Of a DNA stretch of 64,000 nt, positions 44,555 through 64,000 are shown piece by piece. Source of the stretch: Dendrobates tinctorius (taxonomy: Eukaryota); NCBI RefSeq assembly GCF_039654945.1, contig NW_027361731.1, positions 25,668,001 through 25,732,000 on the forward strand, in the 5' to 3' direction. Made by a program: the position numbers and the translations under genes. The first letter of the stretch is position 1. Each line of letters opens with the position of its first letter. The notes under the pieces were generated by a model that ran no database searches, was not told the origin of the DNA, and was given only the letters and a program-made list of their open reading frames with translations.

Positions 44555-44733
44555 GCTTTGTGCATTAGTATAGAAACATTTTAGTTTGTGATTGGTTTCT
44601 CCTTCTCCAATATTTTTTTTAATTAGATTCTTTCGTCTTTGTTCTTCCTTTCCACTTCTAATAGCAGAGTTCTCAGTAGCATTTGTCAGGTGTATGGCTT
44701 TTTCTGGTCTTTTGCTTCCCTTCCCATGTTGTT

Positions 44734-45696
44734 CTAGTTTAAAGCTCTCCTTACAAGTGTAGCAAGGCGACTTCCAAATACCTGCTTTCCAGTCTTCGTA
44801 AGGTGCACCCCATCTCTAGCAAGTAGTCCATCGTATAAGTAGTTCACTCCGTGATCCAGAAATCCAAATCGTTGCTGACGGCACCATCGACGTAGCCAGT
44901 TGTTCACCTGCAGAATCTTATTCCACCTCCTTGTTCCATGGCCATCCACTGGGAGGATGGAAGAGAAGACCACCTGCGCTCCCAGTTCTTTCACTTTCTT
45001 GCCTAAGTCTTCAAAGTCTCTGCAGATGGTTTCCAGGTCGTTTCTTGCGGTGTCATTTGTCCCCACATGTAGTAGCAGGAATGGGTAGTCATCTGTAGGT
45101 CTGAAGAGTCCTGATATCCTGTCAGACACATCTTTAATTTTTGCACCTGGAAGACAGCACATTTCTCTTGAAGTTATATCCGGTCTGCAGATAGCGGCCT
45201 CTGTTCCTCTCAACAGGGAATCCCCCATGACCACCACTCTCCGTTTCTTCTTCACAACATTTTTCTTTCTCCATCCAGGAGGACTCTGAAGGCGTACAAG
45301 GTTGCTGTTTGTTGGCAGAGTCTTATCCTGATGTATTTCTTCATCGTTTTCCTGCGTGAGAGCCTGGTACTGGTTCCTGAGCAGTATGGGTGCTGACTGC
45401 CTCCTGATCCTCCTGCTTCTCTGGGTCACATGTCTCCATTCCTCTGTTTCTTCAGGTGCACTTCGAATTTCTTCTCTTTCTGTAACATGAAGAGATAATT
45501 CTGCTCTGTCCAAGAACTCTTCACCTTCCTTAATGATCTTCAACGTAGCTAACCTCTCTTCGAGATTTTGCAACTTTTCCTCCAACAGGGTCACAAGCTT
45601 GCATTTGTGGCATGTGAAGTTTGGCTTTTCCACTGGTAAATCTGTGAACATGTAGCAAGAAATGCAGCTCACCAAATGGCTCCTGGCCTCTTCCAT
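44734..45696 (-). CDS. CR1 ORF1: N-terminal CxxC...CxxC zinc finger, coiled coil, SGNH/GDSL esterase (320 aa from ATG 45696)
   Basis: CISC...CHKC, heptad-like LEEKLQNLEERL, and SGNH blocks VMGDSLLRG, LHVGTND, DGVH. Ends RRALN*. Confidence 0.92.
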   Translation of the reverse strand: MEEARSHLVSCISCYMFTDLPVEKPNFTCHKCKLVTLLEEKLQNLEERLATLKIIKEGEEFLDRAELSLHVTEREEIRSAPEETEEWRHVTQRSRRIRRQSAPILLRNQYQALTQENDEEIHQDKTLPTNSNLVRLQSPPGWRKKNVVKKKRRVVVMGDSLLRGTEAAICRPDITSREMCCLPGAKIKDVSDRISGLFRPTDDYPFLLLHVGTNDTARNDLETICRDFEDLGKKVKELGAQVVFSSILPVDGHGTRRWNKILQVNNWLRRWCRQQRFGFLDHGVNYLYDGLLARDGVHLTKTGKQVFGSRLATLVRRALN

Positions 45697-45736
45697 CTTG
45701 AGATTTCTTAAAAAGATGAAAGATGAGCCAAAATTC

Positions 45737-46034
45737 GGCACTTGGAATATGCAAATGATCTCCTCAAGACTCTTCCCCTGGTTTCTCCGATTTCCTCTTT
45801 TCAGCTGCAACGGCCAAAACCCAGTGATCGTTGAGCTCGCGGAGACTCTTCACTTATCCCAGAAGGCACTTGGAATATGCAAATGATCTCCTCAAGACTC
45901 TTCCCCTGGTTTCTCCGATTTCCTCTTTTCAGCTGCAACGGCCAAAACCCAGTGATCGTTGAGCTCGCGGAGACTCTTCACTTATCCCAGAAGGCACTTG
46001 GAATATGCAAATGATCTCCTCAAGACTCTTCCCC
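45737..46034 (-). repeat. CR1 5'UTR: 2.3 tandem copies of a 128-bp monomer, each with an octamer ATGCAAAT
   Basis: GGCACTTGGAATATGCAAATGATCTCC starts at 45737, 45865 and 45993 (period 128). Confidence 0.9.
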
Positions 46035-46302
46035 TGATGACGACCTCCGTACCGGCCCCGGAGAAGGATGTGGTGACAACTAGGTGCGTATCTGTTGTGT
46101 TAATGGAATCAGGATCTTCTTTGCACTTGTCCACTCCCTTAGGATCCACATCGCCGCCCAGACCACATTACAGATGGCGCCAACTACAGGACAAAGATTT
46201 ACTCCTAACAGAAAACCACAAATCTCGCACTTTATGACATCACGATACAAGATTTACAACAACAAAACCAAGGTGACGTTTCCATTAAAAAATACAAATA
46301 AT

Positions 46303-46632
46303 CCCCTCCCTGTAGCGTCCGCCCTCGGGTCTCATCCCCTCCCGGTAGCGTCCGCCCTCGGGTCTCATCCCCTCCCGGTAGCGTCCGCCCTCGGGTCTCA
46401 TCCCCTCCCGGTAGCGTCCGCCCTCGGGTCTCATCCCCTCCCGGTAGCGTCCGCCCTCGGGTCTCATCCCCTCCCGGTAGCGTCCGCCCTCGGGTCTCAT
46501 CCCCTCCCGGTAGCGTCCGCCCTCGGGTCTCATCCCCTCCCGGTAGCGTCCGCCCTCGGGTCTCATCCCCTCCCGGTAGCGTCCGCCCTCGGGTCTCATC
46601 CCCTCCCGGTAGCGTCCGCCCTCGGGTCTCAT
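46303..46632. repeat. 33-bp minisatellite (~10 copies) in the probable 3' UTR/flank of gene B
   Basis: Unit CCCCTCCCGGTAGCGTCCGCCCTCGGGTCTCAT. Single-copy homolog at ~55877-55903. Confidence 0.95.
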
Positions 46633-47024
46633 CTCCACTAGTCACTTCCTGCAAACTAACAAAACATAAAAAAAATAGAAAAGTGGGTCCTGAAGGAAGA
46701 AAAAGGCAATGGTGGCCCGGGTGGGATGGGAGCAGAGGGCGGTGGTCCGGGAAGAGGGGAGCCCAGGGTGGTGGCAGCCTGGGTAGATGAGAGAAGAGTA
46801 CGGTGGCCCAATGAGAGGGAAGCCGAGGGCAGTGGTGGTGGCCCGGGAAACGGGGCCGAGAGCGGCGGCAGCCTAGAAAAGAGGGGGCCCAGAGCGGCGG
46901 CAGCAGCATCCTGGGAAAGGGGGGCCGAGGTCAGTGGCGGCCCGGGGAGCATTAGGCGACTCTACTTGTAGGAGTCATCTCCAGATGAGACGCTCCATCC
47001 ACGAGTGCTCATCAGTCACAGCGC

Positions 47025-47496
47025 ATAGCAGGCTGCCACCATGATTAGCGCTGCCCGGTGACTGCCGGTCCCACATGATCGGTTCCTCCCAGCATGCCAT
47101 GGGGCAGGTGTCGCTCAGCAGCCATGTTTTCTTTTCCTGTGTGCTCTCAGTCCGGCGGCGGACTGGAAGGCTCTCCCGCACTCCTCGCACTCGTGCAGCG
47201 TCTTGTCCAGGTGCTGCGCCTGGTGACTCTCCAGATCGGTTTCTGTGGTGAAGCAGGTGCCGCAGATCTCGCAGCAGAGCATTACCTCCATGTGACGCTC
47301 TGCAGATCCCAGCTCGCGGTTACAGTTCAGCTTTTCTTTCCGCCTTATTCTTTTTGTCGTCTTCCTTGTGAGCGTGGAAACATCAGGGAGCACAAGAGTC
47401 ATGGAGGCTTCGTCCTCCCCCCCTGCAGCGAGGCCGTCGCAGTCTGCACCACGGACCGTACCTGACAAAGAGAGCGAGATCATCAGGATCCTGCAG
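47025..47496. repeat. 472-bp direct duplicate, apparently identical to 56835-57306 (zinc-finger exon plus short flanks)
   Basis: Line-by-line match at offset 9810 from ATAGCAGGCTGCCACC to CAGGATCCTGCAG, with abrupt divergence outside. Confidence 0.93.
47115..47461 (-). CDS. Gene B terminal coding exon: basic patch + two C2H2 zinc fingers
   Basis: Acceptor CTCTCTTTGTCAG| at 47462. CEICGTCFTTETDLESHQAQH (C-x2-C-x12-H-x3-H) and CEECGRAFQSAAGLRAHRKRKH (C-x2-C-x12-H-x4-H). RKTTKRIRRK is NLS-like. Confidence 0.85.
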
Positions 47497-49600
47497 CTTG
47501 AGGCGCGACTAGAGGACACAACGCTCAACCGCAGCTCTATATGGACTGGAGTATATATGTGCGTCCACGGCTCTAGAAGTGACCGGAGCATATGTCGTAC
47601 CCACAGCAATAAATGTGACCACTTATTGACACTCTATAGAGGTCTCTCCCTTCCCCGAGGCTGCACTGTACCATACACCGCCAATGTCACCGACGACACG
47701 GAGGCATCCGCACCTCTCGCTGCTGGTTCGGTGGCTGCAGAGCATTATGGGATATCAGCCAAGCTGCTGGCAGTGAAAGCAGACATATGAGTGCAGCTAT
47801 GGCTGTGACTAGAGTGGAAGATGATATAACAGATATTATACATATGATGATATATGATGACTAGTACCTGTGATGGGGGTGGTCTCTTCCCCCTCAGAGC
47901 CCCCGCTGACCCCTCCGCCAGATTCGGGTACTTCATTCTCATCTAGATATAAAGATAAATGTGGGATGAAGCACCAATATAGCTCTGTATGTGACGAGCA
48001 GCAGAAGTGTGAGCGCAGCTGGGTATGTGACGAGCAGCAGAAGTGTGAGCGCAGCTGGGTATGTGACGAGCAGCAGAAGTGTGAGCGCAGCTGGGTATGT
48101 GACGAGCAGCAGAAGTGTGAGCGCAGCTGGGTATGTGACGAGCAGCAGAAGTGTGAGCGCAGCTGGGTATGTGACGAGCAGCAGAAGTGTGAGCGCAGCT
48201 GGGTATGTGACGAGCAGCAGAAGTGTGAGCGCAGCTGGGTATGTGACGAGCAGCAGAAGTGTGAGCGCAGCTGGGTATGTGACGAGCAGCAGAAGTGTGA
48301 GCGCAGCTGGGTATGTGACGAGCAGCAGAAGTGTGAGCGCAGCTGGGTATGTGACGAGCAGCAGAAGTGTGAGCGCAGCTGGGTATGTGACGAGCAGCAG
48401 AAGTGTGAGCGCAGCTCGGTATGTGACGAGCAGCAGAAGTGTGAGCGCAGCTCGGTATGTGACGAGCAGCAGAAGTGTGAGCGCAGCTCTGTATGTGACG
48501 AGCAGCAGAAGTGTGAGCGCAGCTGGGTATGTGACGAGCAGCAGAAGTGTGAGCGCAGCTGGGTATGTGACGAGCAGCAGAAGTGTGAGCGCAGCTGGGT
48601 ATGTGACGAGCAGCAGAAGTGTGAGCGCAGCTCGGTATGTGACGAGCAGCAGAAGTGTGAGCGCAGCTCGGTATGTGACGAGCAGCAGAAGTGTGAGCGC
48701 AGCTCGGTATGTGACGAGCAGCAGAAGTGTGAGCGCAGCTCGGTATGTGACGAGCAGCAGAAGTGTGAGCGCAGCTGGGTATGTGACGAGCAGCAGAATC
48801 GTGGAATGTTAGAAGGGACATCCAGGGTAATCGTGTCTCACCCCCTGCCCAATGTAGGAGTCACTAAACCCTCTCAGATGTCTGTCCAGCTTCTGAAGAC
48901 TTCCACTGAAGAACGGCCCAGACCTGAACCTAAGGGACAATCTGTGGTGACCTGAAGGGGGCGCTGTACACAGGAGATGCCCACGCAAATCAGATAGATG
49001 TGGAGCTGCTGCAAGGAGGCGGCCGCAATCATTGCCAATTCTCGATGTGCCGTGCTGATAGACACCGACCCAAAAACACTGAACACTGCCAGAAACTCAC
49101 AAGGGACTGTAACACAGCATTAGTATAAGGGTGTGGAGATTTATGCAACTGCATCATGTTAATCTACTTTTTCCACCCAAAGAGATTTCACTTCAATTTT
49201 CATTGCATTTGTACAGATTATGGGCAACACTAAAGGTGGGAAAAGTTCTGAAATCATTGTTCTTGGTGGGATTTTTTTTTAATCAGGGGTGTGTAGACTT
49301 TTCCTATCCACTGTAGGGATAGTCAGTGATGTGTGTGGCGGATCAGCGGCCATCATCCAATTGCTGTGACTCGTTACCTCTTCTCCGGACCGTGCAGAGG
49401 ATGCTGGCGATCTTAGTGGGGCGCCCGCTCCGGGGACGGGAGGAGACGGTATTGAAAGTCTTCCACTTGTAGATGATCTGCCGGACGGTGGACCGGTGCA
49501 GGTCACACACTTTGCTGATGGTCTTATAACCCTTCCCGGCCTCGTGGGCCTCCACCACCTTCCTCCGCACCTCGTCAGAGATCTCCTTGGATCGGGGCAT
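47115..49600 (-). CDS. Gene B: spliced Tc1-transposase HTH - acidic linker - 2x C2H2 zinc-finger fusion protein, predicted 214 aa; join(49600-49378, 47942-47868, 47461-47115)
   Basis: Exon lengths 223+75+347=645 nt, all junctions phase 1 with GT-AG, no stops until TGA 47117-47115. Paralog A has the same architecture. Caveat: a competing acceptor at 49311 would truncate the product. Confidence 0.72.
47868..47942 (-). CDS. Gene B linker exon (75 nt, DENEVPESGGGVSGGSEGEETTPIT)
   Basis: Acceptor TTTATCTTTATATCTAG| at 47943, donor CAG|GTACTA at 47867. Symmetric phase 1, resembles gene A exon ENE...EGEE. Confidence 0.65.
47981..48798. repeat. 36-bp minisatellite (~23 copies), intronic in gene B
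   Basis: Unit GTATGTGACGAGCAGCAGAAGTGTGAGCGCAGCT(G/C)G. Shares CAGCAGAAnnGTGAGYGCAGCT with the large satellite. Confidence 0.95.
48797..48912 (-). mobile_element. Decayed CR1 3'-end fragment
   Basis: AGATGTCTGTCCAGC..GAAGACTTCCA.TGAAG and AGAATCGT..GAAGGGAC align to the intact CR1 3' end at 41755-41880. Confidence 0.75.
48915..49313 (+). mobile_element. Decayed Tc1-like transposon, 3' end (transposase C-terminus + right TIR, TA at 49314-49315)
   Basis: Frameshifted remnant of SPDLNPIENLW-DLK-AVHRRCP...CKE...SRCAVLID (48916-49123). Terminus GGGGTGTGTAGACTTTTCCTATCCACTG-TA has the Tc1 CAGTG/CACTG end. Confidence 0.8.
49378..49600 (-). CDS. Gene B coding exon 1: Tc1/mariner transposase N-terminal paired-like HTH (PAI) + RSGRPTK linker
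   Basis: MPRSKEISDEVRRKVVEAHEAGKGYKTISKVCDLHRSTVRQIIYKWKTFNTVSSRPRSGRPTK. Acceptor TGCAG|CCAGGAACCATG at 49610, donor AGAG|GTAACG at 49377. Confidence 0.82.
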
Positions 49601-49704
49601 GGTTCCTGGCTGCAAAGCACCTGGAGGGGAGTGCTGGATGGGGGAACGACTGCACCCGGGAAATCAGAGCAACTGTCCTCACAATTCCATGACCTGTGGA
49701 GACA

Positions 49705-51226
49705 CAACGATAAGAAAAACTAAGTACACCCTTACTGCTTCTGTAGGAATGAAGAGGGCAGGAAGCAGCGGGGTACTGCCAATCACATCCCTGATCAACT
49801 GTCCATCAGTCAGTGTGAGCACTGCTATAAAAGCAGAAGTTCTGGCAGTTTGCTGGCCTGGAGCATTCAGGCGAGTATTACCACAATGTCAATGGGGACA
49901 GACATCAGCCCTGACCTCAGAGAAGCCATTTATAGACAAGCTGGAGTCCACAGTGAGAAACATTCAATATGGCTGACAATCTTTCATCCTCCTAAAGTAG
50001 TAGTGGACGTTCCAGCAAATTCAACCTGAGATCAGCCGTGCAATGCTCAGAGAAAGTGCAATAAGCCCAAGAGCTATAGCTCAGTCTCTAAAGGCCTGTT
50101 AAATAATTATGTTATGGCTGTGATGGAAGGGTCGGAGGAGAAAGCCTCTTCTTTCGATAAATAATCTGGCTAGTTTGGAAGCTACAAGATTTCTGGATTG
50201 CTGCACTTTGGAGAGACAAGTAGGTGCGCGCGGGGCCGCAAGAGAGCGGAGCGGGAAGGTGCGCGCGGGGCCGCAAGAGAGCGGAGCGGGAAGGTGAGCG
50301 CGGGGCCGCAAGAGAGCGGAGCGGGAAGGTGAGCGCGGGGCCGCAAGAGAGCGGAGCGGGAAGGTGAGCGCGGGGCCGCAAGAGAGCGGAGCGGGAAGGT
50401 GAGCGCGGGGCCGCAAGAGAGCGGAGCGGGAAGGTGAGCGCGGGGCCGCAAGAGAGCGGAGCGGGAAGGTGAGCGCGGGGCCGCAAGAGAGCGGAGCGGG
50501 AAGGTGAGCGCGGGGCCGCAAGAGAGCGGAGCGGGAAGGTGAGCGCGGGGCCGCAAGAGAGCGGAGCGGGAAGGTGAGCGCGGGGCCGCAAGAGAGAGGA
50601 GCGGGAAGGTGAGCGCGGGGCCGCAAGAGAGCGGAGCGGGAAGGTGAGCGCGGGGCCGCAAGAGAGCGGAGCGGGAAGGTGAGCGCGGGGCCGCAAGAGA
50701 GCGGAGCGGGAAGGTGAGCGCGGGGCCGCAAGAGAGCGGAGCGGGAAGGTGAGCGCGGGGCCGCAAGAGAGCGGAGCGGGAAGGTGAGCGCGGGGCCGCA
50801 AGAGAGCGGAGCGGGAAGGTGAGCGCGGGGCCGCAAGAGAGCGGAGCGGGAAGGTGAGCGCGGGGCCGCAAGAGAGCGGAGCGGGAAGGTGAGCGCGGGG
50901 CCGCAAGAGAGCGGAGCGGGAAGGTGAGCGCGGGGCCACAAGAGAGCGGCATAGTAAGTGCACGGAAAAATATAACCAATAACAGCTGCAGTCCATCCAG
51001 GAGCGGGGGGCGGACAGGCGTCCAGAAAAGCATCACAGCAGATATCGCTGCCACAGGAGGCGCTAGAGCTCCAGGTCAGGGGTGTACTCACTTCTCACTC
51101 TGCAGCCTCTGCACATAATCCCTGGCGTGACCCGTCCTGCGCTTCATCTGGTGATAACTATAACGACCAGAGATTTATTCCATTCTGATACCTCAGAGGG
51201 TGTACTCACTTCTTCTCATAACTGCA
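49705..51226 (+). mobile_element. Decayed, internally deleted IR/DR-type Tc1 transposon in intron 1 of gene B
   Basis: Left inner repeat AAAAACTAAGTACACCCT 49715-49732, TATAAAAGCAGAAG promoter, degenerate transposase 5' part (..DISPDLREAI.., SGRSSKF...AMLRE...PRA, RRKPLL) ~49886-50220, right repeats GGGTGTACTCACTTCT at 51080-51095 and 51198-51213, ending ..ATAACTG-CA. Confidence 0.72.
50223..50949. repeat. 35-bp GC-rich minisatellite (~21 near-identical copies) inside the Tc1 relic
   Basis: Unit GGGAAGGTGAGCGCGGGGCCGCAAGAGAGCGGAGC. Confidence 0.96.
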
Positions 51227-51399
51227 CACTGATCACATGACGTGTGTGTATATAGCTATGTGATCACATTACAGAGCATGGCCCCCACAGCTGTCACTCC
51301 CACACACAATCACCCTCCTCCTCACAGACCTGTAGACCGGAGGCGGCAGCATCTGTGGAGACGAGTCCGGGGCTTCTACTCTGCAGGAGGCGGCCGCGG

Positions 51400-51520
51400 A
51401 GGCTGCTGGGAGATGTAGTGCTCACCGCGCACCCACAGCAGCCGCCGCTCATTAGTGCTGCTGTAAGATAGGACCTACGGTGACGTCACGGCCACGTGAC
51501 CCTTGTGTGGGCGGGGCTAT
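51400..51520 (-). promoter_or_regulatory. Candidate CpG-island promoter and non-coding exon 1 of gene B
   Basis: Full CRE TGACGTCA 51481-51488, E-box CACGTG 51493-51498, GC box 51509-51516, ZNF143-like ACTACATCTCCCAGCAGCC (- strand, 51419-51401), donor GCG|GTGAGC at 51425. Confidence 0.62.
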
Positions 51521-51833
51521 TACTATAGCATTCCATGCAGAGATGCGGCCGCCGGCCACACTGAGAGGCGGCAGAGAGGCCGGCGGCTGTGTACGGACGC
51601 CGGGTGAGGCGGGGGGGCCGCCTCTGCTCTGTTTCTCAGCGCCTGTAGTTTGGCTCAACCGTGGTCTCCGGTGCGCGGCGGGTTATAATACACCGCCGGT
51701 TACACAGAGCCCGATGTTAGGGTCCGTTATTCTTTTCTATCCTGTTGGGTTTAGGCTGCTGTGTACACAACCGGCCGCGTCCCGTGCTGGAAGTGCTCTG
51801 CTAATATATGATCGGTCTGCCGCTGTCACCCTC

Positions 51834-53120
51834 TCCCCGCTCCCACCTGCCCTCTGCCTCGTGACCTGCCCGCTCCCACCTGCCCTGCCCCCTCCTGACC
51901 TGCCCTCTGCCTCCTGACCTGCCGGCTCACACCTGCCCTCTGCCTCCTGACCTGCCGGCTCACACCTGCCCTCTGCCTCCTGACCTGCACGCTCCCACCT
52001 GCCCTCTGCCTCCTGACCTGCACGCTCCCACCTGCCCTGCCCCCTCCTGACCTGCCCTCTGCCTCCTGACCTGCCGGCTCACACCTGCCCTCTGCCTCCT
52101 GACCTGCCGGCTCACACCTGCCCTCTGCCTCCTGACCTGCCGGCTCACACCTGCCCTCTGCCTCCTGACCTGCACGCTCCCACCTGCCCTGCCCCCTCCT
52201 GACCTGCCCTCTGCCTCCTGACCTGCACGCTCCCACCTGCCCTCTGCCTCCTGACCTGCCCGCTCCCACCTGCCCTGCCCCCTCCTGACCTGCCCTCTGC
52301 CTCCTGACCTGCCGGCTCACACCTGCCCTCTGCCTCCTGACCTGCCGGCTCACACCTGCCCTCTGCCTCCTGACCTGCCCGCTCCCACCTGCCCTCTGCC
52401 TCCTGACCTGCCCGCTCCCACCTGCCCTGCCCCCTCCTGACCTGCCCTCTGCCTCCTGACCTGCCGGCTCCCACCTGCCCTCTGCCTCCTGACCTGCCCG
52501 CTCCCAACTGCCCTGCCCCCTGACCTGCCCTCTGCCTCCTGACCTGCCCGCTCCCACCTGCCCTCTGCCTCCTGACCTGCCTGCTCCCACCTGCCCTGCC
52601 CCCTGACCTGCCCGCTCCCTCCTGACCTGCCCTCTGCCTCCTGACCTGCCTGCTCCCACCTGCCCTGCCCCCTGCCTCACGACCTGCCCGCTCCCACCTG
52701 CCCTCTGCCTCCCGACCTGCCCTCTGCCTCCTGACCTGCCCGCTCCCACCTGCCCTGCCCCCTGACCTGCCCGCTCCCACCTGCGCTCTGCCTCCCGACC
52801 TGCCCGCACCCTCCTGACCTGCCCTCTGCCTCCTGACCTGCCCGCTCCCACCTGTGCTCTGCCTCCCGACCTGCCCTCTGCCTCCTGACCTGCCTGCTCC
52901 CACCTGCCCTCTGCCTCCTGACCTGCCCGCTCCCACCTGCGCTCTGCCTCCCGACCTGCCCGCTCCCTCCCGACCTGCCCGCTCCCACCTGCCCTCTGCC
53001 TCCAGACCTGCCCGCTCCCACCTTCCCTCTGCCTCCCGACCTGCCCGCTCCCACCTGCGCTCTGCCTCCCGACCTGCCCGCTCCCACCTGCGCTCTGCCT
53101 CCCGACCTGCCCTCTGCCTC
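51834..53120. repeat. Compound pyrimidine-rich minisatellite of shuffled ~14-19-bp ACCTGCCC modules
   Basis: Modules CCTGCCCTCTGCCTCCTGA, CCTGCCCGCTCCCA and CCTGCCGGCTCACA in irregular order. Confidence 0.9.
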
Positions 53121-53219
53121 CAATGTGCCTGAACCCTCCTGACACAGAGGGTCTGGGTCCAATGCAGAGAAGACATCACCTGCTCTACAGAAGAAAGCCA
53201 CATCCTGTATGTGGGAGCA

Positions 53220-54948
53220 TGATACTGTGTGTGGGGGAATGTTCTGTTGGGACATCATACTGTGTGTGAGGGGGAATGTACTGTGGGGACATCATACTGT
53301 GTGTGTGGGGGAATGTACTGAGGGGATATCATACTGTGTGTGTGTGGGAATGTACTGAGGGGACATCATACTGTGTGGGAATGTACTGAGGGGACATCAT
53401 ACTGTGTGTGTGTGGGAATGTACTGAGGGGACATCATACTGTGTGTGTGTGGGAATGTACTGAGGGGACATCATACTGTGTGTGTGGGGGAATGTACTGA
53501 GGGGACATCATACTGTGTGTGTGGGGGAATGTACTGAGGGGACATCATACTGTGTGTGTGGGGGAATGTACTGAGGGGACATCATACTGTGTGTGGGGGG
53601 AATGTACTGAGGGGACATCATACTGTGTGTGGGGGGAATGTACTGAGGGGACATCATACTGTGTGTGGGGGGGAATGTACTGAGGGGACATCATACTGTG
53701 TGTGGGGGGGAATGTACTGAGGGGACATCATACTGTGTGTGTGGGGGAATGTACTGAGGGGACATCATACTGTGTGTGGGGGAATGTACTGAGGGGACAT
53801 CATACTGTGTGTGGGGGAATGTACTGAGGGGACATCATACTGTGTGTGGGGGGGAATGTACTGAGGGGACATCATACTGTGTGTGGGGGGGAATGTACTG
53901 AGGGGACATCATACTGTGTGTGGGGGGGAATGTACTGAGGGGACATCATACTGTGTGTGGGGGGGAATGTACTGAGGGGACATCATACTGTGTGTGGGGG
54001 AATGTACTGAGGGGACATCATACTGTGTGTGGGGGAATGTACTGAGGGGACATCATACTGTGTGTGGGGGGGAATGTACTGTCAGGACATCATACTGTGT
54101 GTGGGGGAATGTACTGTGGGGACATCATACTGTGTGTGTGTGGGAATGTACTGAGGGGACATCATACTGTGTGTGTGTGGGAATGTACTGAGGGGACATC
54201 ATACTGTGTGTGTGGGGGAATGTACTGAGGGGACATCATACTGTGTGTGTGGGGGAATGTACTGAGGGGACATCATACTGTGTGTGTGGGGGAATGTACT
54301 GAGGGGACATCATACTGTGTGTGTGGGGGAATGTACTGAGGGGACATCATACTGTGTGTGTGGGGGAATGTACTGAGGGGACATCATACTGTGTGTGTGG
54401 GGGAATGTACTGAGGGGACATCATACTGTGTGTGTGGGGGAATGTACTGAGGGGACATCATACTGTGTGTGTGGGGGAATGTACTGAGGGGACATCATAC
54501 TGTGTGTGTGGGGGAATGTACTGAGGGGACATCATACTGTGTGTGTGGGGGAATGTACTGAGGGGACATCATACTGTGTGTGTGGGGGAATGTACTGAGG
54601 GGACATCATACTGTGTGTGTGGGGGAATGTACTGAGGGGACATCATACTGTGTGTGGGGGAATGTACTGAGGGGACATCATACTGTGTGTGGGGGAATGT
54701 ACTGAGGGGACATCATACTGTGTGTGGGGGGGAATGTACTGAGGGGACATCATACTGTGTGTGGGGGGGAATGTACTGAGGGGACATCATACTGTGTGTG
54801 GGGGAATGTACTGAGGGGACATCATACTGTGTGTGGGGGAATGTACTGAGGGGACATCATACTGTGTGTGGGGGGGAATGTACTGTCAGGACATCATACT
54901 GTGTGTGGGGGAATGTACTGTGGGGACATCATACTGTGTGTGGGGAAT
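53220..54948. repeat. 35-37-bp minisatellite (~47 copies) with variable (TG)n/Gn tract
   Basis: Unit AATGTACTGAGGGGACATCATACTGTGTGT(GT)GGGGG. Confidence 0.95.
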
Positions 54949-55984
54949 TGTGGTAGCAGGGAACCATGTGGAAGAACATTATGCAGTGGAGGCCATGAGG
55001 ACAGTAAGGGGCTTCAGTAGGGTGTAATAACTGAGTGCTGCAGTATACGTCACACTCATCATCTTTGGACGTTGCTAGGTCTGTCTGGGAGGACTGCGCC
55101 TATGTGCAGTGATAGACTTTTGGGGTCCTGTGATTTCTAGGACTCCCCTGCTCAGGAACATTCCTCTGTAGGGACACTGGTCTCATGTGCGGGGGCACTA
55201 GTCATAGTGGTATATGCTTTGGGTAGAGGTGGGGAAGGTGATGAACCGGCGGCTAAGTCAGAAGCCAAGTATCTGTGTGCTACATCTTGCAGGGACTGGG
55301 AGTGCGATCAGTCAGAATGTCACCGGTGAGGACCTGCACAGTGCACACAGAGCACGGCTGCAGACCTGGTACTGTCACCATATTGTGGTAACATCAGTAC
55401 TAATGATCAGCATGGCGGTATTATCACTACTGTACATGATGGTTAGAGTCCGGCAGTTATATTGCGGTATTACTGGAAATATCAGTCTTGTAGTAAATGC
55501 TGATTTCTTGCAGGCAGGGTAATATTAGTAACAGACCCCAGATGGGGAACATGACGGAGCCGGCGTGGGCCTGTGTGCTGGCAAATTCCCGGACTGAAAG
55601 TTGGCCCCAGTCCAGCTCCAGCTGGAAATCTATCATTGGCCACATTGGGTACAGCGGTTGTGTGGGGGTCCGCTAAGTAACTCACTGTTACGCAGGAGGC
55701 GCCGGTCCGGTGATGCGTCTCTGCACCCACTCAGAATTCTCACGGCAGCGCATACACTGCACAGATGGTGCCCCCTACAGAACAAATATAGGCTCAAGTG
55801 CAAAGTTTTGTGTGTTTTTATAACATCAATTTCTACAAGATAACAAAATTCATACGATAGTTTGGTTAAAAAAAATTCCCTCCTGTAGTGTCCGCCCTCG
55901 GGTAGTGTTCCCACTAGGGTTACTTACTGCAAAAAGAAAAATGGGTAAATAGAAAAGAAGATCCTGAATGGAGAAGCGAAGATG

Positions 55985-56750
55985 AGGGCTGCGGCCAGGA
56001 AAGGAGCAGAGAAGAGCTGCGGCCAGGAGAGGAGCAGAGAAGAGCTGCGGCCAGGAGAGGAGCAGAGAAGAGCTGCGGCCAGGAGAGGAGCAGAGAAGAG
56101 CTGCGGCCAGGAGAGGAGCAGAGAAGAGCTGCGGCCAGGAGAGGAGCAGAGAAGAGCTGCGGCCAGGAGAGGAGCAGAGAAGAGCTGCGGCCAGGAGAGG
56201 AGCAGAGAAGAGCTGCGGCCAGGAGAGGAGCAGAGAAGAGCTGCGGCCAGGAGAGGAGCAGAGAAGAGCTGCGGCCAGGAGAGGAGCAGAGAAGAGCTGC
56301 GGCCAGGAGAGGAGCAGAGAAGAGCTGCGGCCAGGAGAGGAGCAGAGAAGAGCTGCGGCCAGGAGAGGAGCAGAGAAGAGCTGCGGCCAGGAGAGGAGCA
56401 GAGAAGAGCTGCGGCCAGGAGAGGAGCAGAGAAGAGCTGCGGCCAGGAGAGGAGCAGAGGGCTGCGGCCAGGAGAGGAGCAGAGGGCTGCGGCCAGGGGA
56501 GGAGAGCCGAGAGCTGCAGTCAGAACTGCAGCGAGGAAAGGAGCCAAGGGCTGTGGCCAGGAGAGAAGAGCTGCAGCCAGAACTGCAGCGAGGAAAGGAG
56601 CCAAGGGCTGTGGCCAGGAGAGAAGAGCTGCAGCCAGGGGAGGAGAGCCGAGAGCTGCAGTCAGAACTGCAGCGAGGAAAGGAGCCAAGGGCTGTGGCCA
56701 GGAGAGAAGAGCTGCAGCCAGGAAAGGATTAGAGGGCTGCGGACAGGAGA
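55985..56750. repeat. 28-bp minisatellite (~18 clean copies to ~56495, then degenerate) in the probable 3' UTR of gene A
   Basis: Unit AGAGCTGCGGCCAGGAGAGGAGCAGAGA. Confidence 0.92.
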
Positions 56751-56924
56751 GAATAAGGACACCCTTAGCACAGGGGTCATCTACCAAATGTACACAAGTG
56801 TCCCCTACATCCATTAGGGATTACCAGACAGCATATAGCAGGCTGCCACCATGATTAGCGCTGCCCGGTGACTGCCGGTCCCACATGATCGGTTCCTCCC
56901 AGCATGCCATGGGGCAGGTGTCGC

Positions 56925-57271
56925 TCAGCAGCCATGTTTTCTTTTCCTGTGTGCTCTCAGTCCGGCGGCGGACTGGAAGGCTCTCCCGCACTCCTCGCAC
57001 TCGTGCAGCGTCTTGTCCAGGTGCTGCGCCTGGTGACTCTCCAGATCGGTTTCTGTGGTGAAGCAGGTGCCGCAGATCTCGCAGCAGAGCATTACCTCCA
57101 TGTGACGCTCTGCAGATCCCAGCTCGCGGTTACAGTTCAGCTTTTCTTTCCGCCTTATTCTTTTTGTCGTCTTCCTTGTGAGCGTGGAAACATCAGGGAG
57201 CACAAGAGTCATGGAGGCTTCGTCCTCCCCCCCTGCAGCGAGGCCGTCGCAGTCTGCACCACGGACCGTAC
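56925..57271 (-). CDS. Gene A terminal coding exon: two C2H2 zinc fingers (identical to gene B exon)
   Basis: Acceptor at 57272. Same translation as 47461-47115. Confidence 0.85.
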
Positions 57272-59222
57272 CTGACAAAGAGAGCGAGATCATCAGGATC
57301 CTGCAGTTTCAGGCGCAACCGGAGAAGCCAGGCAAGACCCACAATTAAAGGGGCACAAAGAAAAATACATTTTAGTCAGCAAAAATCCTCAAAAGCGTTA
57401 ATGTGCTGAGAGTCTTTGCTGTGTCCCATGTCACCCGCCGTCCCCAGCCATGTAGAGATGCTGCAGGGTCGTATACTCCACTTCTGGTGAAAAGTGACGA
57501 CAATATACAGGTGACACGGGCGGGGACCCTCCAGCTGATCGCCAGGAGCGGAGTAAGCGACCATGAGCTGCAGCATCTGCACATGCCGGGCGCAGAGCAG
57601 CACACAGGGAATGTCAGCAGCAGCTTCGTCTATTGATAAATGGTCCCTTTGTGTGTGGGAACCACACTAACATTCTGCAGAAATGACTTACCTGAGACTC
57701 GCGAGTCCTCCTCGCCCTCCGCACTGACGCTCTCCTCTTCTATCTTTAGGGTCTCGTTTTCTGGACAAAAAAGGACACAAATAATGAAACAGAACAGGCG
57801 AAACTCCAGGAGGGCAGCCGAGAATTAATGCAAAACAAACACTCTCTACACCTGAACACTATCCGCTCTCCTACCTGACACCTGCGCGTTGTCCACTCTC
57901 GTACCTGACACCTAAGCGATCTCCACTCTCGTATTTGACACTTGAATGCTCTCATACATAACACCCGAGCGCTCCCTGTTCTTGTACCTGACACCCGAGC
58001 GCTCTGCTCCCGTACCTGACACCTGAACGCTCTCTGCTCTCGTACCTGACACCTGAACGCTCTCTGCTCTCGTACCTGACACCTGAACGCTCTCTGCTCT
58101 CGTACCTGACACCTGAACGCTCTCCACTCTTGTATTTGACACTTGAGTGCTCTCATACATAACACTCGAGCGCTCCCTGTTCTTGTACCTGACACCCGAG
58201 CGCTCTCTGCTCCCTTACCTGACACCTGAACGCTCTCCGCTCTCGTACCCGACACCCGCGCGCTCTCCGCTCTCGTACCCGACACCCGCGCGCTCTCCGC
58301 TCTCGTACCCGACACCCGCGCGCTCTCCGCTCTCGTACCCGACACCCGCGCGCTCTCCGCTCTCGTACCCGACACCCGCGCGCTCTCCGTTCTCGTACCT
58401 GACACCTGCGCGTTGTCCACTCTCGTACCTGACACCTAAGCGATCTCCACTCTCGTATTTGACACTTGAATGCTCTCATACATAACACCCGAGCGCTCCC
58501 TGTTCTTGTACCTGACACCCGAGCGCTCTGCTCCCGTACCTGACACCTGAACGCTCTCTGCTCTCGTACCTGACACCTGAACGCTCTCTGCTCTCGTACC
58601 TGACACCTGAACGCTCTCTGCTCTCGTACCTGACACCTGAACGCTCTCCACTCTTGTATTTGACACTTGAGTGCTCTCATACATAACACTCGAGCGCTCC
58701 CTGTTCTTGCACCTGACACCCGAGCGCTCTCTGCTCCCTTACCTGACACCTGAACGCTCTCCGCTCTCGTACCCGACACCCGCGCGCTCTCCGCTCTCGT
58801 ACCCGACACCCGCGCGCTCTCCGTTCTCGTACCTGACACCTGCGCGCTCTCCGTTCTCGTACCTGACACCTGCGCGCTCTCCTCCCCGTTGGCTCTGTCA
58901 CCTTCTGTTGTGATTTTCCGACTCTGACAACCTGTGGGTAGAAGGACAGTGATGTAAGTGGCCGATCAGCTACCGCCCCGGAGCAGCGGCCGGTCTCGTT
59001 ACCTCTCCGCAGCTGGCGCAGGACGGTGGCCATCTTGGTGGGGCGGCCGCTCCGGGGAAGTGTGGAGATAGTGTTGAAGGTCTTCCACTTGTAGATGATC
59101 TTCCTCACTGTGGAGTGGTGCAGCTCACACATCTTACTGATGGTTTTGTAGCCTTTCCCAGCCTCGTGAGCCTCCACCACCCTCCTCCGCACGTCCTCCG
59201 AGAAGTCCTTGGACCGGGGCAT
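56925..59222 (-). CDS. Gene A: spliced Tc1-transposase HTH - acidic linker - 2x C2H2 zinc-finger fusion protein, predicted 234 aa (274 aa with donor 58742); join(59222-59003, 58931-58863, 57760-57692, 57271-56925)
   Basis: Exon lengths 220+69+69+347=705 nt. All junctions phase 1, GT-AG with pyrimidine tracts, open to TGA 56927-56925. Confidence 0.8.
57692..57760 (-). CDS. Gene A acidic linker exon (ENETLKIEEESVSAEGEEDSRVS)
   Basis: Strong acceptor TCCTTTTTTGTCCAG| at 57761 and perfect donor CAG|GTAAGT at 57691. 69 nt, symmetric phase 1. Confidence 0.82.
57845..58880. repeat. 30-bp minisatellite with a 524-bp higher-order duplication, overlapping the exon/intron junction of gene A
   Basis: Unit CTCGTACCTGACACCTGAACGCTCTCTGCT and variants. 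The variant pattern at 57912 repeats at 58436. Confidence 0.92.
58863..58931 (-). CDS. Gene A linker exon (GCQSRKITTEGDRANGEESAQVS); 3' boundary uncertain (donors every 30 nt down to 58742)
   Basis: Acceptor TCCTTCTACCCACAG| at 58932 (71-nt intron). Donor TCAG|GTACGA at 58862 or TCAG|GTAAGG at 58742. Confidence 0.6.
59003..59222 (-). CDS. Gene A coding exon 1: Tc1/mariner transposase N-terminal paired-like HTH + RSGRPTK linker
   Basis: MPRSKDFSEDVRRRVVEAHEAGKGYKTISKMCELHHSTVRKIIYKWKTFNTISTLPRSGRPTK. Acceptor-like CTCTCTTCGGTGCAG|CCGGGAACCATG at 59232, donor AGAG|GTAACG at 59002. Confidence 0.85.
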
Positions 59223-59319
59223 GGTTCCCGGCTGCACCGAAGAGAGCAGAACAGAAGGCGTCACCGGGACCTCACCGAGTCCACGGCGTGCAGCGGACAG
59301 CCACAACAACATCAAAGCT

Positions 59320-59575
59320 CAGCAGTCACGTGACCTGCGCAGGACGCTCTGCGCACACAACTGGGACGATCAGCAGTCACATGACCGGCGTGCACAGGCT
59401 CAGAAAAGATTCACCAATCAGCGTCGTTACGTCACCGGACGGTCAACCAATAGACGGAAACGAAAAGCGCTAGTAAGTATTGTCTCACACCCGGCAGTAG
59501 TGTCCCCAACTTGGCGGCCATCTTATTGTAGCCGGGACCACAGGCTGGGCTCCGTCTGTTGCTATGGCAGCTGAG
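59320..59575. promoter_or_regulatory. Candidate CpG-rich, possibly bidirectional promoter of gene A
   Basis: GTCACGTGAC 59325-59334, GTCACATGAC 59376-59385, CCAAT 59414 and 59447, TTACGTCA 59427-59434, YY1-like GGCGGCCATCTT 59513-59524, X-box-like GTTGCTATGGCAGC 59558-59571. Confidence 0.62.
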
Positions 59576-59626
59576 CGTTGCCCACATTCTGCGGGGTGAT
59601 CCACAGAGCTCTGGACTGGAGCTGCC

Positions 59627-60655
59627 GCAGGCTGTGCACATACTGTAGATAGAACCGCAGGGTGTGCACGGAGATAGAACCGCAGGGTGTGCACATACTG
59701 TAGATAGAACCGCAGGGTGTGCACGGAGATAGAACCGCAGGGTGTGCACATACTGTAGATAGAACCGCAGGGTGTGCACGGAGATAGAACCGCAGGGTGT
59801 GCACATACTGTAGATAGAACCGCAGGGTGTGCACGGAGATAGAACCGCAGGGTGTGCACATACTGTAGATAGAACCGCAGGGTGTGCACGGAGATAGAAC
59901 CGCAGGGTGTGCACATACTGTAGATAGAACTGCAGGGTGTGCACGGAGATAGAACCGCAGGGTGTGCACATACTGTAGATAGAACCGCAGGGTGTGCACG
60001 GAGATAGAACCGCAGGGTGTGCACATACTGTAGATAGAACTGCAGGGTGTGCACATACTGTAGATAGAACCGCAGGGTGTGCACATACTGTAGATAGAAC
60101 CGCAGGGTGTGCACATACTGTAGATAGAACTGCAGGGTGTGCACGGAGATAGAACCGCAGGGTGTGCACATACTGTAGATAGAACCGCAGGGTGTGCACA
60201 TACTGTAGATAGAACCGCAGGGTGTGCACATACTGTAGATAGAACCGCAGGGTGTGCACATACTGTAGATAGAACTGCAGGGTGTGCACGGAGATAGAAC
60301 CGCAGGGTGTGCACATACTGTAGATAGAACTGCAGGGTGTGCACGGAGATAGAACCGCAGGGTGTGCACATACTGTAGATAGAACTGCAGGGTGTGCACG
60401 GAGATAGAACCGCAGGGTGTGCACATACTGTAGATAGAACCGCAGGCTGTGCACATACTGTAGATAGAACCGCAGGGTGTGCACATACTGTAGATAGAAC
60501 TGCAGGGTGTGCACGGAGATAGAACCGCAGGGTGTGCACATACTGTAGATAGAACTGCAGGGTGTGCACGGAGATAGAACCGCAGGGTGTGCACATACTG
60601 TAGATAGAACCGCAGGCTGTGCACATACTGTAGATAGAACCGCAGGCTGTGCACA
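59627..60655. repeat. Minisatellite of interspersed 25-bp and 30-bp units
   Basis: GATAGAACCGCAGGGTGTGCAC followed by either GGA or ATACTGTA. Confidence 0.95.
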
Positions 60656-63900: not shown

Positions 63901-64000
63901 TTCTCATCCATGGAGGGGTCACTCACAATGTGCGGGGGGCTTCTCATCCATGGAGGGGGTCACTCACAATGTGTGGGGGCTTCTCATCCATGGAGGGGTC
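60927..64000. repeat. ~40-bp minisatellite (39-42 bp, ~77 copies), runs off window end
   Basis: Unit TCCATGGAGGGG(A/G)TCACTCACAATGTG(T/C)GGGGGCTTCTCA. Confidence 0.96.

What the first reader, a model, noticed from the sequence alone, without database searches (positions are those of the whole stretch)
47115..59222. Tandem pair of spliced Tc1-transposase-HTH / C2H2 zinc-finger fusion genes (candidate domesticated transcription-factor family)
Seen: two - strand loci each start with a 73-74-codon exon encoding only the N-terminal HTH and RSGRPTK linker of a Tc1 transposase. Both have the same context (TGCAG|CCRGGAACCATG upstream, AGAG|GTAACG donor), followed by short acidic symmetric phase-1 exons and a 347-nt exon with two C2H2 fingers. 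Splicing gives uninterrupted 234-aa (A) and 214-aa (B) ORFs, each with a CpG-rich promoter upstream. No second HTH subdomain, DDE domain or TIR belongs to these exons. The ORF track shows only the fragments. Established: host-transposase fusions made by splicing exist (SETMAR, KRAB-transposase fusions), and the Pax paired domain is related to Tc1 DNA-binding domains. Inference: this is a co-opted bipartite DNA-binding protein family (transposase HTH + zinc fingers) that could regulate host genes or Tc1 copies. I do not recognise it as a named gene; novelty needs a search.
Basis: partly seen in the sequence, partly recalled or inferred. Interest (0 to 1): 0.92.

Follow-up and report, generated by a model that had tools for sequence, protein, structure and literature searches.

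The report
Frog transposase-HTH / zinc-finger fusion genes
Two neighbouring poison-frog genes really do splice the first DNA-binding helix bundle of an old Tc1 "jumping gene" enzyme onto two zinc fingers; the gene is transcribed, conserved across many hyloid frog families and under purifying selection, so it is a genuine but so far undescribed example of a known process (transposase capture by a host gene).

Summary
The window is Dendrobates tinctorius. On the minus strand, gene A (4 coding exons, 234 aa) and gene B (3 exons, 214 aa) each begin with a Tc1/Sleeping-Beauty PAI-type HTH exon and end in an identical 347-nt exon with two C2H2 fingers.

- **Splicing:** RNA contigs from D. tinctorius and from a related species carry all three gene-A junctions.
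- **Conservation:** the same architecture occurs in at least 11 other frog genera (Hyloidea, plus Pseudophryne in Myobatrachoidea). It was not found in ranoid frogs or Xenopus.
- **Selection:** exon-1 dN/dS between A and B is 0.14-0.18 at dS 0.69. HTH exons group by paralogue and terminal exons by species, which indicates recurrent gene conversion.
- **Loss of transposon parts:** no RED subdomain, DDE domain or TIR remains.

This is a domesticated host-transposase fusion family, most likely a small nuclear DNA-binding regulator; that function is inferred. It is a new member of a known kind: automatically annotated as "uncharacterized", and I found no paper describing it. One sub-claim fails: only gene A has a CpG-island promoter directly upstream. 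Other notes of this scan (s1-366902, s1-366945) cover the same stretch, not other DNA.

The parts
59335..59600 (-). Gene A promoter region (CpG island, TATA-less; CCAAT-type and CACGTG-type motifs seen by eye)
   Evidence: CpG o/e 0.91 and GC 0.58 over 59223-59600. RNA contigs reach 59334 but not beyond. Sequence read.
59223..59334 (-). Gene A 5' UTR. It contains an in-frame upstream ATG at 59312 that NCBI uses for a 264-aa model.
   Evidence: Contig X1 record 2 is continuous from 59001 to 59334. P0002 equals a 30-aa extension plus the 234-aa ORF.
59003..59222 (-). Gene A exon 1: Tc1/Sleeping-Beauty PAI-type HTH, RSGRPTK linker and 10 further residues (73 codons + 1 nt)
   Evidence: Pfam HTH_SB E 3.9e-19. 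Donor junction 59003>58931 in RNA contigs.
58863..58931 (-). Gene A exon 2 (69 nt, phase 1-1)
   Evidence: Both junctions in RNA contigs X1, X4 and X5. Homologous residues are present in Bufo, Hyla, Leptodactylus and Rhinoderma proteins.
57848..58882 (-). 30-nt minisatellite (about 35 units) that begins inside exon 2 and fills intron 2. Each unit repeats the exon-2 donor; the read-through frame is open for 258 codons.
   Evidence: TRF. In-phase donors at +30, +120 and +150 nt. The longest NCBI product of gene A is 274 aa, i.e. 264 + 10. Ranitomeya imitator isoform P0005 carries three extra 10-aa units.
57692..57760 (-). Gene A exon 3 (69 nt, acidic, phase 1-1)
   Evidence: Junctions 58863>57760 and 57692>57271 in RNA contigs.
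56925..57271 (-). Gene A terminal coding exon: disordered segment, basic KRIRRKEK patch, two C2H2 fingers, stop codon
   Evidence: Pfam zf-C2H2 E 7.7e-10 with 2 stretches. RNA contig covers 56800-57274. AF2 fingers have pLDDT 79-89.
49378..49600 (-). Gene B exon 1: PAI-type HTH and linker (74 codons + 1 nt)
   Evidence: Pfam HTH_SB E 5.2e-20. 82% nt identity to A exon 1. RNA runs hold 0.82 of the words of 49330-49650.
47987..48798 (-). 36-nt minisatellite inside gene B intron 1
   Evidence: TRF: 22.6 copies, 99% matches.
47868..47942 (-). Gene B exon 2 (75 nt, acidic, phase 1-1). It corresponds to exon 3 of gene A.
   Evidence: Spliced ORF equals P0001. Phyllobates isoform P0008 lacks exactly these 25 residues. 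Alignment.
47115..47461 (-). Gene B terminal coding exon, identical to that of gene A
   Evidence: 0 differences in 347 nt.
47025..47496 (.). Gene-conversion tract, copy B (472 nt, 100% identical to 56835-57306)
   Evidence: Mismatch map. blastn finds homology between the two loci only here and at exon 1.
56835..57306 (.). Gene-conversion tract, copy A
   Evidence: Terminal exons group by species in three dendrobatid genera.

Best explanation
These are two tandem paralogues of a domesticated host-transposase fusion gene of hyloid frogs.

**Origin (inferred).** An ancestral Tc1 (Sleeping-Beauty-like) element contributed only its start codon, the first three-helix PAI subdomain and the RSGRPTK minor-groove linker. 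A splice donor just after the linker joins this exon to short acidic exons and to a terminal exon with a basic patch and two C2H2 fingers.

**Shown here.**
- The gene-A mRNA is spliced in this way.
- The architecture is conserved across many frog families.
- The HTH exon is under purifying selection.
- The RED subdomain, DDE domain and TIRs are gone.
- The paralogues' terminal exons are homogenised by gene conversion.

**Function (inferred).** The product is a small nuclear protein of 214-234 aa that binds DNA through the HTH plus AT-hook-like linker, possibly helped by the fingers. The acidic disordered middle would act as an effector or spacer. It would therefore be a lineage-specific transcription regulator whose original targets were probably relics of the cognate Tc1 terminal repeats.
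For: **Anatomy and splicing**
- ORFs and splice sites were verified.
- RNA contigs from three runs of two species carry all three gene-A junctions.
- Gene-B and gene-A ORFs equal NCBI models P0001 and P0002.

**Domains and fold**
- Pfam HTH_SB at E 1e-19 to 1e-20, and zf-C2H2.
- PDB Sleeping Beauty PAI subdomain 2m8e, E 3.7e-7, over residues 1-52.
- AF2 model: helices 9-20, 25-32 and 36-51 at pLDDT above 90; residues 74-156 disordered; two beta-beta-alpha fingers at 160-214.

**Distribution**
- The same HTH_SB + C2H2 architecture is present in Ranitomeya, Phyllobates, Anomaloglossus, Leptodactylus, Engystomops, Bufo (2 species), Hyla, Eleutherodactylus, Rhinoderma and Pseudophryne.
- Pseudophryne's first two fingers are 54% identical to those of Bufo, against 31-36% for its other fingers.

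**Conservation and selection**
- Invariant positions include the recognition helix (S37, T38, V39, I42, Y44, K45, W46, F49), the linker PRSGRP-K, and all zinc ligands.
- dN/dS is 0.14 for the HTH and 0.18 for the whole exon, at dS about 0.69.
- Against the related species' ortholog, the HTH exon has only synonymous changes.
- The family HTH forms one clade with support 97/90, and the nearest transposases are only 55-70% identical.

**Loss of transposon parts**
- No RED or DDE remnant was found, and no TIR.

**Concerted evolution**
- The HTH exon groups by paralogue (support 99/97), while the terminal exon groups by species.
Against: - No DNA-binding, localisation or regulatory data exist.
- A PAI subdomain alone is only half of the transposase's bipartite DNA-binding domain.
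- The predicted base-contact positions of the fingers are unusual for DNA-reading fingers: T/T/D/S with acidic neighbours in finger 1, and S/A/G/A in finger 2. This is read using the standard -1/2/3/6 rule, and it means the fingers may bind protein or RNA instead.
- Gene-B junctions and its 5' end were not checked with reads, and its immediate upstream DNA is CpG-poor.
- Exon structure and synteny in other species could not be examined because frog genome DNA was not retrievable.
- A single origin that includes Pseudophryne is unresolved on the HTH tree.
Confidence: 0.66

Rival explanations
1. Transposon-control protein. The PAI-only product works mainly against Tc1 elements. It would occupy their terminal repeats, or form mixed oligomers with transposase through the PAI subdomain, and so damp transposition in a Tc1-rich genome. 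This resembles truncated DNA-binding-only repressors of other DNA transposons.
For: - The retained part is exactly the TIR-recognising and oligomerising N-terminus of Sleeping-Beauty-type transposases (the role of PAI is from established SB literature, not tested here).
- First-stage notes report many Tc1 copies in this genome, some called intact (unchecked).
- Bufo isoforms splice a second, unrelated Tc1 DNA-binding domain onto the same downstream exons.
Against: - The family HTH is only 55-70% identical to the nearest transposases found.
- It has been conserved across frog families while the donor element has left no trace at the locus. This fits a host function better than an arms race.
- The slow, purifying evolution shows no sign of the positive selection expected in conflict.
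- No cognate Tc1 of D. tinctorius could be compared.
Confidence: 0.2
2. Non-DNA-binding adaptor. The HTH and the two atypical fingers serve protein-protein or RNA contacts, and the protein is not a sequence-specific transcription factor.
For: - Finger contact positions are small or acidic and invariant.
- There are only two fingers and only half a paired-like domain.
- Foldseek gives no significant match for the whole model: E is above 1e-3, and the listed hits are zinc-finger DNA-binding structures.
Against: - The recognition helix and the GRP-type linker are invariant.
- The fingers match DNA-bound tandem C2H2 structures by sequence, for example ZNF568 at E 3e-24 and Aart at E 2e-18.
- A basic patch next to the fingers is conserved.
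Confidence: 0.12
3. No gene at all. Decayed Tc1 5' fragments happen to lie upstream of a zinc-finger exon, and the ORFs are a reading artefact or annotation chimeras.
For: - The region is packed with minisatellites and repeats.
- Tc1 fragments are common in this genome.
Against: - Spliced RNA contigs occur in two species.
- Intact orthologous ORFs exist in at least 12 genera.
- dN/dS is 0.14-0.18.
- Between the two loci only the exons remain alignable.
Confidence: 0.02

Closest known systems
Host-transposase fusion (HTF) genes of tetrapods, e.g. KRABINER (Cosby et al., bioRxiv 10.1101/2020.05.07.082677; Science 2021)
   Same: - A transposase DNA-binding domain sits on its own exon and is joined to other exons by splicing.
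- The element is of the Tc1/mariner superfamily.
- The gene is kept under purifying selection. Their Table S3 lists dN/dS of 0.1-0.4; here it is 0.14-0.18.
- The family later expanded by segmental duplication.
- An acceptor-like TGCAG lies just upstream of the transposase ATG, the position they found used in 8 of 9 cases. The Rhinoderma protein with a duplicated HTH exon appears to use it.
   Different: - Here the transposase piece is the first coding exon and supplies the start codon. It is linked by a donor just after the HTH linker, not by an acceptor.
- Only the PAI half of the DNA-binding domain is kept.
- The partner is two C2H2 fingers and an acidic linker, with no KRAB, SCAN or SET effector.
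- Their survey used Xenopus and Nanorana as the only frogs, and my term searches of their Table S3 found no such entry.
Sleeping Beauty transposase PAI subdomain (PDB 2m8e, 6urs)
   Same: Residues 1-52 align end to end at E 3.7e-7, and the predicted three-helix bundle has pLDDT above 90.
   Different: The RED subdomain, the catalytic DDE domain and the terminal repeats are all absent.
Pax paired domain and Drosophila DNA-binding-module domestications of Tc1/mariner (toy, cag, CG4570; PMC13548663)
   Same: A Tc1/mariner DNA-binding module is retained without the catalytic domain, and in Pax/toy it is fused to a second DNA-binding domain.
   Different: - Pax keeps both PAI and RED and is pan-metazoan, and its partner is a homeodomain.
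- Pfam PAX is only a weak sub-threshold hit here (E 0.034, 14.5 bits against a cutoff of 22).
- This family is confined to one frog clade.
SETMAR
   Same: It is a spliced fusion of a host exon set with a Tc1/mariner-superfamily transposase part (established knowledge, also cited).
   Different: - SETMAR keeps the whole mariner transposase at the C-terminus.
- Its host part is a SET methyltransferase domain.
- It is specific to primates.
Ranoid acidic-N-terminus + PAI + RED proteins (P0022, P0025, P0271, P0300, P0249, P0261)
   Same: They carry a closely related Tc1 HTH (about 64-70% identical), have no DDE domain, and are conserved among several ranoid genera.
   Different: - They keep the RED subdomain and have no zinc fingers.
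- The HTH is internal or C-terminal.
- On the HTH tree they lie with Tc1 transposases in a branch separate from the family studied here.

Membership tests
Host-transposase fusion gene (HTF, sensu Cosby et al.) | Contains a domain derived from a DNA-transposon transposase | tested here: met
   Pfam HTH_SB at E 3.9e-19 and 5.2e-20. SB PAI structure 2m8e at E 3.7e-7. tblastn with the Tc1 transposase queries gives 53-70% identity.
Host-transposase fusion gene (HTF, sensu Cosby et al.) | Transposase-derived and non-transposase domains lie on separate exons joined in one mRNA | tested here: met
   For gene A, three GT..AG junctions occur in single RNA contigs of X1, X4 and X5. Gene B is supported only by identity to the NCBI model and by RNA word share.
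Host-transposase fusion gene (HTF, sensu Cosby et al.) | Orthologues in several species with the transposase part under purifying selection | tested here: met
   At least 12 genera carry the architecture. Paralogue dN/dS is 0.14-0.18. Against the related species the HTH exon has 2 synonymous and 0 non-synonymous changes. A cross-species codon test was not possible because no frog DNA could be retrieved.
Host-transposase fusion gene (HTF, sensu Cosby et al.) | A pre-existing host gene that received the transposon (parental gene identifiable) | tested here: inconclusive
   No HTH-less orthologue was identified. The zinc-finger-only profile search was swamped by poly-zinc-finger proteins. Pseudophryne's longer finger array hints at a multi-finger parent.
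Host-transposase fusion gene (HTF, sensu Cosby et al.) | The locus is immobile: no TIRs and no catalytic domain needed for mobility | tested here: met
   No DDE or RED remnant at E <= 0.01. No flanking inverted repeats longer than 17 nt.
Autonomous or decayed Tc1 element | HTH continuous with RED and DDE coding sequence, flanked by TIRs; copies resemble other genomic copies more than orthologous loci | tested here: not met
   The family HTH is 73-95% identical between frog families but at most 70% identical to any transposase found.
Pax / paired-domain proteins | Complete paired domain (PAI + RED) scoring above the Pfam PAX threshold | tested here: not met
   PAX scores E 0.034 and 14.5 bits against a cutoff of 22, and only for the PAI part.
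KRAB/SCAN zinc-finger proteins (names given by automatic annotation to some orthologues) | KRAB or SCAN domain present | tested here: not met
   No KRAB or SCAN hit appears in the Pfam scans of the exons or in the precomputed Pfam lists of the family proteins.

The most novel reading that the evidence does not exclude
The family is a host-encoded, PAI-only 'decoy' that polices Tc1 elements in hyloid frogs. It would bind the inner or outer direct repeats of Tc1 ends, or poison transposase oligomers. The same locus would keep recruiting new transposase DNA-binding exons, as the second Tc1 DNA-binding domain spliced onto the same exons in Bufo suggests. On this reading the locus is a renewable, exon-swapping anti-transposon gene rather than a fixed transcription factor.
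Probability: 0.15. Interest if true: 0.75.

Novelty: new member of a known kind. Interest (0 to 1): 0.45.

Why it matters
- **A new architecture for transposase capture.** This adds a clean, RNA-supported, multi-family-conserved case from a vertebrate group (hyloid frogs) that was absent from the published tetrapod survey. The transposon supplies the start codon and only half of its DNA-binding domain, and the partner is a second DNA-binding module rather than a repressor domain.
- **A compact test system.** The protein is only 214-234 aa, which makes it a convenient system for asking what a lone PAI subdomain can recognise and whether HTH and fingers read DNA jointly.
- **Natural contrasts for evolutionary study.** The two paralogues have diverged HTH exons and gene-converted finger exons. 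The Bufo isoforms use a different Tc1 DNA-binding domain. Both offer natural contrasts for studying how such fusions evolve.

Tried and rejected
1. **Zinc-finger-only profile search.** I searched the 63-residue zinc-finger profile (A2) against 1.84 billion representatives to find HTH-less ancestors. All 150 listed hits were long poly-zinc-finger proteins scoring by summed repeats. The result was uninformative and used the only job of that kind.
2. **Frog genomic DNA.** I tried to fetch it for exon-structure, synteny and cross-species dN/dS work. Every frog locus came back 'no DNA: file too large', and P0002 was not on record. Only gene lists were obtained. In Ranitomeya variabilis and Phyllobates the two paralogues are on one sequence record but not within 10 kb of each other, so the tight tandem spacing seen here is not shown elsewhere.
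3. **Foldseek of the whole AF2 model against the PDB.** The listed hits were all zinc-finger DNA-binding structures with E above 1e-3. The sequence search of the PDB was more useful.
4. **Origin of the exon-1 donor.** I tried to trace it to the transposase ORF using a metagenomic Tc1 element (L001) and a linker alignment. The transposase has GAG|GTC at its '(G/K)EV' codons, and the family sequence after RSGRPTK may be a shortened 'TIL..V' of RED helix 1. MAFFT did not support a specific gap placement, so this is inconclusive.
5. **Chance arrangement of a Tc1 fragment, or an annotation chimera.** Rejected.
6. **High-copy repeat origin of the HTH exons.** No D. tinctorius protein other than P0001 and P0002 was returned, and the nearest transposases are at most 70% identical. 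The genome itself could not be searched.
7. **Literature.** Two full-text searches and Cosby et al.'s Table S3 gave no description of this family. The published Science version was not held.
Full report
**1. What is in the sequence**

I read the minus strand at 56900-59600 and 47000-50100 and assembled the proposed exons by script.

- Gene A consists of 59222-59003, 58931-58863, 57760-57692 and 57271-56925. It gives an uninterrupted 705-nt CDS of 234 aa.
- Gene B consists of 49600-49378, 47942-47868 and 47461-47115. It gives 645 nt, or 214 aa.
- Every intron is GT..AG with a pyrimidine-rich acceptor, and all internal exons are phase 1-1.
- The two first exons share TGCAG|CCRGGAACC-ATG upstream and AGAG|GTAACG at the donor.
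- Pfam assigns both first exons to HTH_SB, the Sleeping Beauty transposase HTH (E 3.9e-19 and 5.2e-20; match to 52 of 53 model positions). It assigns the terminal exon to zf-C2H2, with two fingers.

**2. Transcription and splicing**

RNA-type runs hold 0.38-0.39 of the sampled words of 56800-59500. That is roughly the exonic share.

- **Gene A:** in two D. tinctorius runs (X1, X4) and one run of a related species (X5; pieces 95-99% alike) a single contig carries all three joints, with CT..AC ends on the plus strand. The joints are 57271|57692, 57760|58863 and 58931|59003, and the contig reaches 59334. A separate contig covers the terminal exon and 3' UTR (56800-57274 and beyond). The break is expected, because that exon is shared with gene B.
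- **Gene B:** only one read-laying run was allowed, so I did not lay reads on it. Three observations support it. Four organism-A RNA runs hold 0.82 of the words of 49330-49650, which fits exon 1 plus its upstream 50 nt without the intron. The spliced ORF is identical to NCBI protein P0001, and A's ORF equals P0002 after a 30-aa upstream-ATG extension. The CDS spans on record, 2486 and 2388 nt, equal 49600-47115 and 59312-56925.

**3. Organism and relatives**

I searched with the terminal-exon residues, using the length of the containing ORF so that full-length proteins were eligible.

- That search returned Dendrobates tinctorius 'uncharacterized protein' at 100% identity. It also returned the same HTH_SB + C2H2 architecture in Ranitomeya variabilis, R. 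imitator, Phyllobates terribilis, Anomaloglossus, Leptodactylus, Bufo bufo, B. gargarizans and Hyla sarda.
- HTH-region and profile searches added Rhinoderma (HTH exon duplicated), Eleutherodactylus, Engystomops and Pseudophryne corroboree.
- NCBI taxonomy places Pseudophryne in Myobatrachoidea and Dendrobates in Hyloidea.
- Pseudophryne has further fingers, but its first two are 54% identical to those of Bufo, against 31-36% for its others.
- Ranoid frogs, Xenopus and Ascaphus gave only Tc1 transposases or HTH+RED proteins without these fingers. This is 'not found' within a length-limited search, not proof of absence.
- By published anuran timetrees (my knowledge, not tested here) this distribution implies an age of several tens of millions of years, and more if Pseudophryne shares the capture.

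**4. Selection and history**

- Between the two loci, blastn finds homology only at exon 1 (82% over 245 nt) and at the terminal-exon tract. Introns and promoters have diverged beyond recognition.
- Nei-Gojobori on exon 1 gives dS 0.69 and dN 0.13, so dN/dS is 0.18. For the 63 HTH codons dN/dS is 0.14.
- Against the related species' transcript, the HTH exon has two synonymous and no non-synonymous differences. The disordered part of the terminal exon has several replacements plus a 12-nt in-frame length difference.
- In a tree of 56 HTH sequences, the 16 nobleobatrachian family members form one clade (UFboot/SH-aLRT 97/90). Pseudophryne is unresolved, and the ranoid proteins lie with Tc1 transposases in a separate branch (88/73).
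- Within dendrobatids the HTH exon groups by paralogue (A-type clade 99/97). The terminal exon groups by species: A versus B is 100% identical in Dendrobates, 98% in Phyllobates and 95% in Ranitomeya. In this window the identical tract is 472 nt.
- The duplication therefore predates the split of these genera, and the 3' exon has been homogenised repeatedly by gene conversion.

**5. What is missing**

- tblastn with seven queries (Tc1 transposases and relatives) finds no match beyond about residue 79 of the transposase part anywhere in the 64 kb.
- No inverted repeats of TIR size flank either HTH exon.
- After RSGRPTK the family sequence no longer aligns convincingly with transposases.

**6. 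Protein anatomy**

- The 12-sequence alignment shows an invariant recognition helix (S37, T38, V39, I42, Y44, K45, W46, F49), an invariant PRSGRP-K linker, invariant zinc ligands and a conserved KRIR basic patch.
- AlphaFold2 with this alignment predicts a confident three-helix bundle at residues 9-51 (pLDDT 92-94). It predicts a disordered stretch at 74-156 that begins acidic and includes the basic patch, and two beta-beta-alpha fingers at 160-214.
- By sequence, residues 1-52 match the solved SB PAI subdomain (2m8e, E 3.7e-7). Residues 161-212 match DNA-bound tandem fingers.
- Applying the usual -1/2/3/6 rule, finger 1 offers T/T/D/S and finger 2 S/A/G/A. These are conserved but atypical for base reading. 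Joint HTH-finger DNA recognition is therefore plausible but unproven.

**7. Interpretation**

The locus meets the criteria used for host-transposase fusion genes (Cosby et al.): a transposase-derived domain on its own exon, a spliced fusion transcript, conservation and constraint. It departs from the common pattern in four ways.

- The transposase part is N-terminal and supplies the ATG.
- It is joined through a donor rather than an acceptor.
- Only the PAI half is kept.
- The partner is a pair of fingers, with no KRAB, SCAN or SET domain.

I consider a lineage-specific nuclear DNA-binding regulator the most likely function. An anti-Tc1 decoy and a non-DNA adaptor remain as rivals.

**8.

- Only gene A has a CpG island directly upstream (o/e 0.91). 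Gene B's proximal 500 nt have o/e 0.23.
- Gene A also has an in-frame upstream ATG at 59312 inside the transcribed 5' region.

**9. Novelty**

The genes are in RefSeq as automatic models without a meaningful name. Two full-text searches and the HTF catalogue, whose frogs were Xenopus and Nanorana only, gave no description of them. I rate the finding a new member of a known kind. It is solid and of moderate interest.

Noticed in passing
window 57848-58882: The 30-nt minisatellite in gene A intron 2 starts inside exon 2, and every unit repeats the exon-2 splice donor. The read-through frame stays open for 258 codons, with in-phase donors at +30, +120 and +150 nt. The longest NCBI product on record for gene A (274 aa) and a Ranitomeya imitator isoform (+30 aa) appear to use later donors. 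The array can therefore add 10-aa units to the protein.
   Followed up: partly
proteins P0246, P0247, P0248 (Bufo gargarizans, B. bufo): Alternative isoforms of the toad orthologue replace the usual HTH exon with a different Tc1-family DNA-binding domain (PAI + RED) and keep the same downstream exons. This may be a second, independent transposase capture at the same locus, conserved between two Bufo species.
   Followed up: partly
proteins P0022, P0025, P0271, P0300, P0249, P0261 (ranoid frogs): Ranoid frogs (Lithobates, Aquarana, Pyxicephalus, Hyperolius, Rana) share proteins with an acidic, serine-rich N-terminus followed by Tc1 PAI + RED. These proteins have no DDE domain and end in a common motif. 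They look like a separate domesticated Tc1 DNA-binding family.
   Followed up: partly
protein P0250 (Esox lucius): A pike protein joins a Tc1 HTH (with part of RED) to a long C2H2 array. It is either an independent fish fusion of the same kind or an annotation chimera.
   Followed up: no
window 1-39303: An 86-bp satellite runs for at least 457 units at 92% matches and fills the first 39 kb of the window. The gene pair therefore sits at the edge of a large satellite block.
   Followed up: partly
window 41822-45810 (minus strand): A non-LTR retrotransposon has two long open frames: a 358-aa ORF1 with a GDSL-lipase/esterase-type domain and a 910-aa ORF2 with endonuclease and reverse-transcriptase-like sequence. 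It lies 1.3 kb downstream of gene B, and NCBI annotates ORF1 as a gene.
   Followed up: partly
window 40249-41743, 46301-46633, 50222-50949, 51836-53121, 53226-54942, 55988-56753, 59625-60655, 60927-63998: Distinct GC-rich minisatellites with periods of 28-55 nt are unusually dense around and between the two genes. Several create long spurious ORFs, and one is annotated as a 524-aa protein.
   Followed up: no
window 49300-49377 versus 58932-59002: By eye, the first 67 nt or so of gene B intron 1 resemble the whole 71-nt intron 1 of gene A, including a CCCTACAG acceptor. Gene B may therefore carry a decayed copy of A's exon 2.
   Followed up: no
window 57109 (and 47299): Both D. tinctorius copies lack 12 nt (4 codons) that are present in the related species' transcript and in the Ranitomeya and Phyllobates proteins. 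This is a lineage-specific in-frame deletion, apparently spread to both paralogues by gene conversion.
   Followed up: partly
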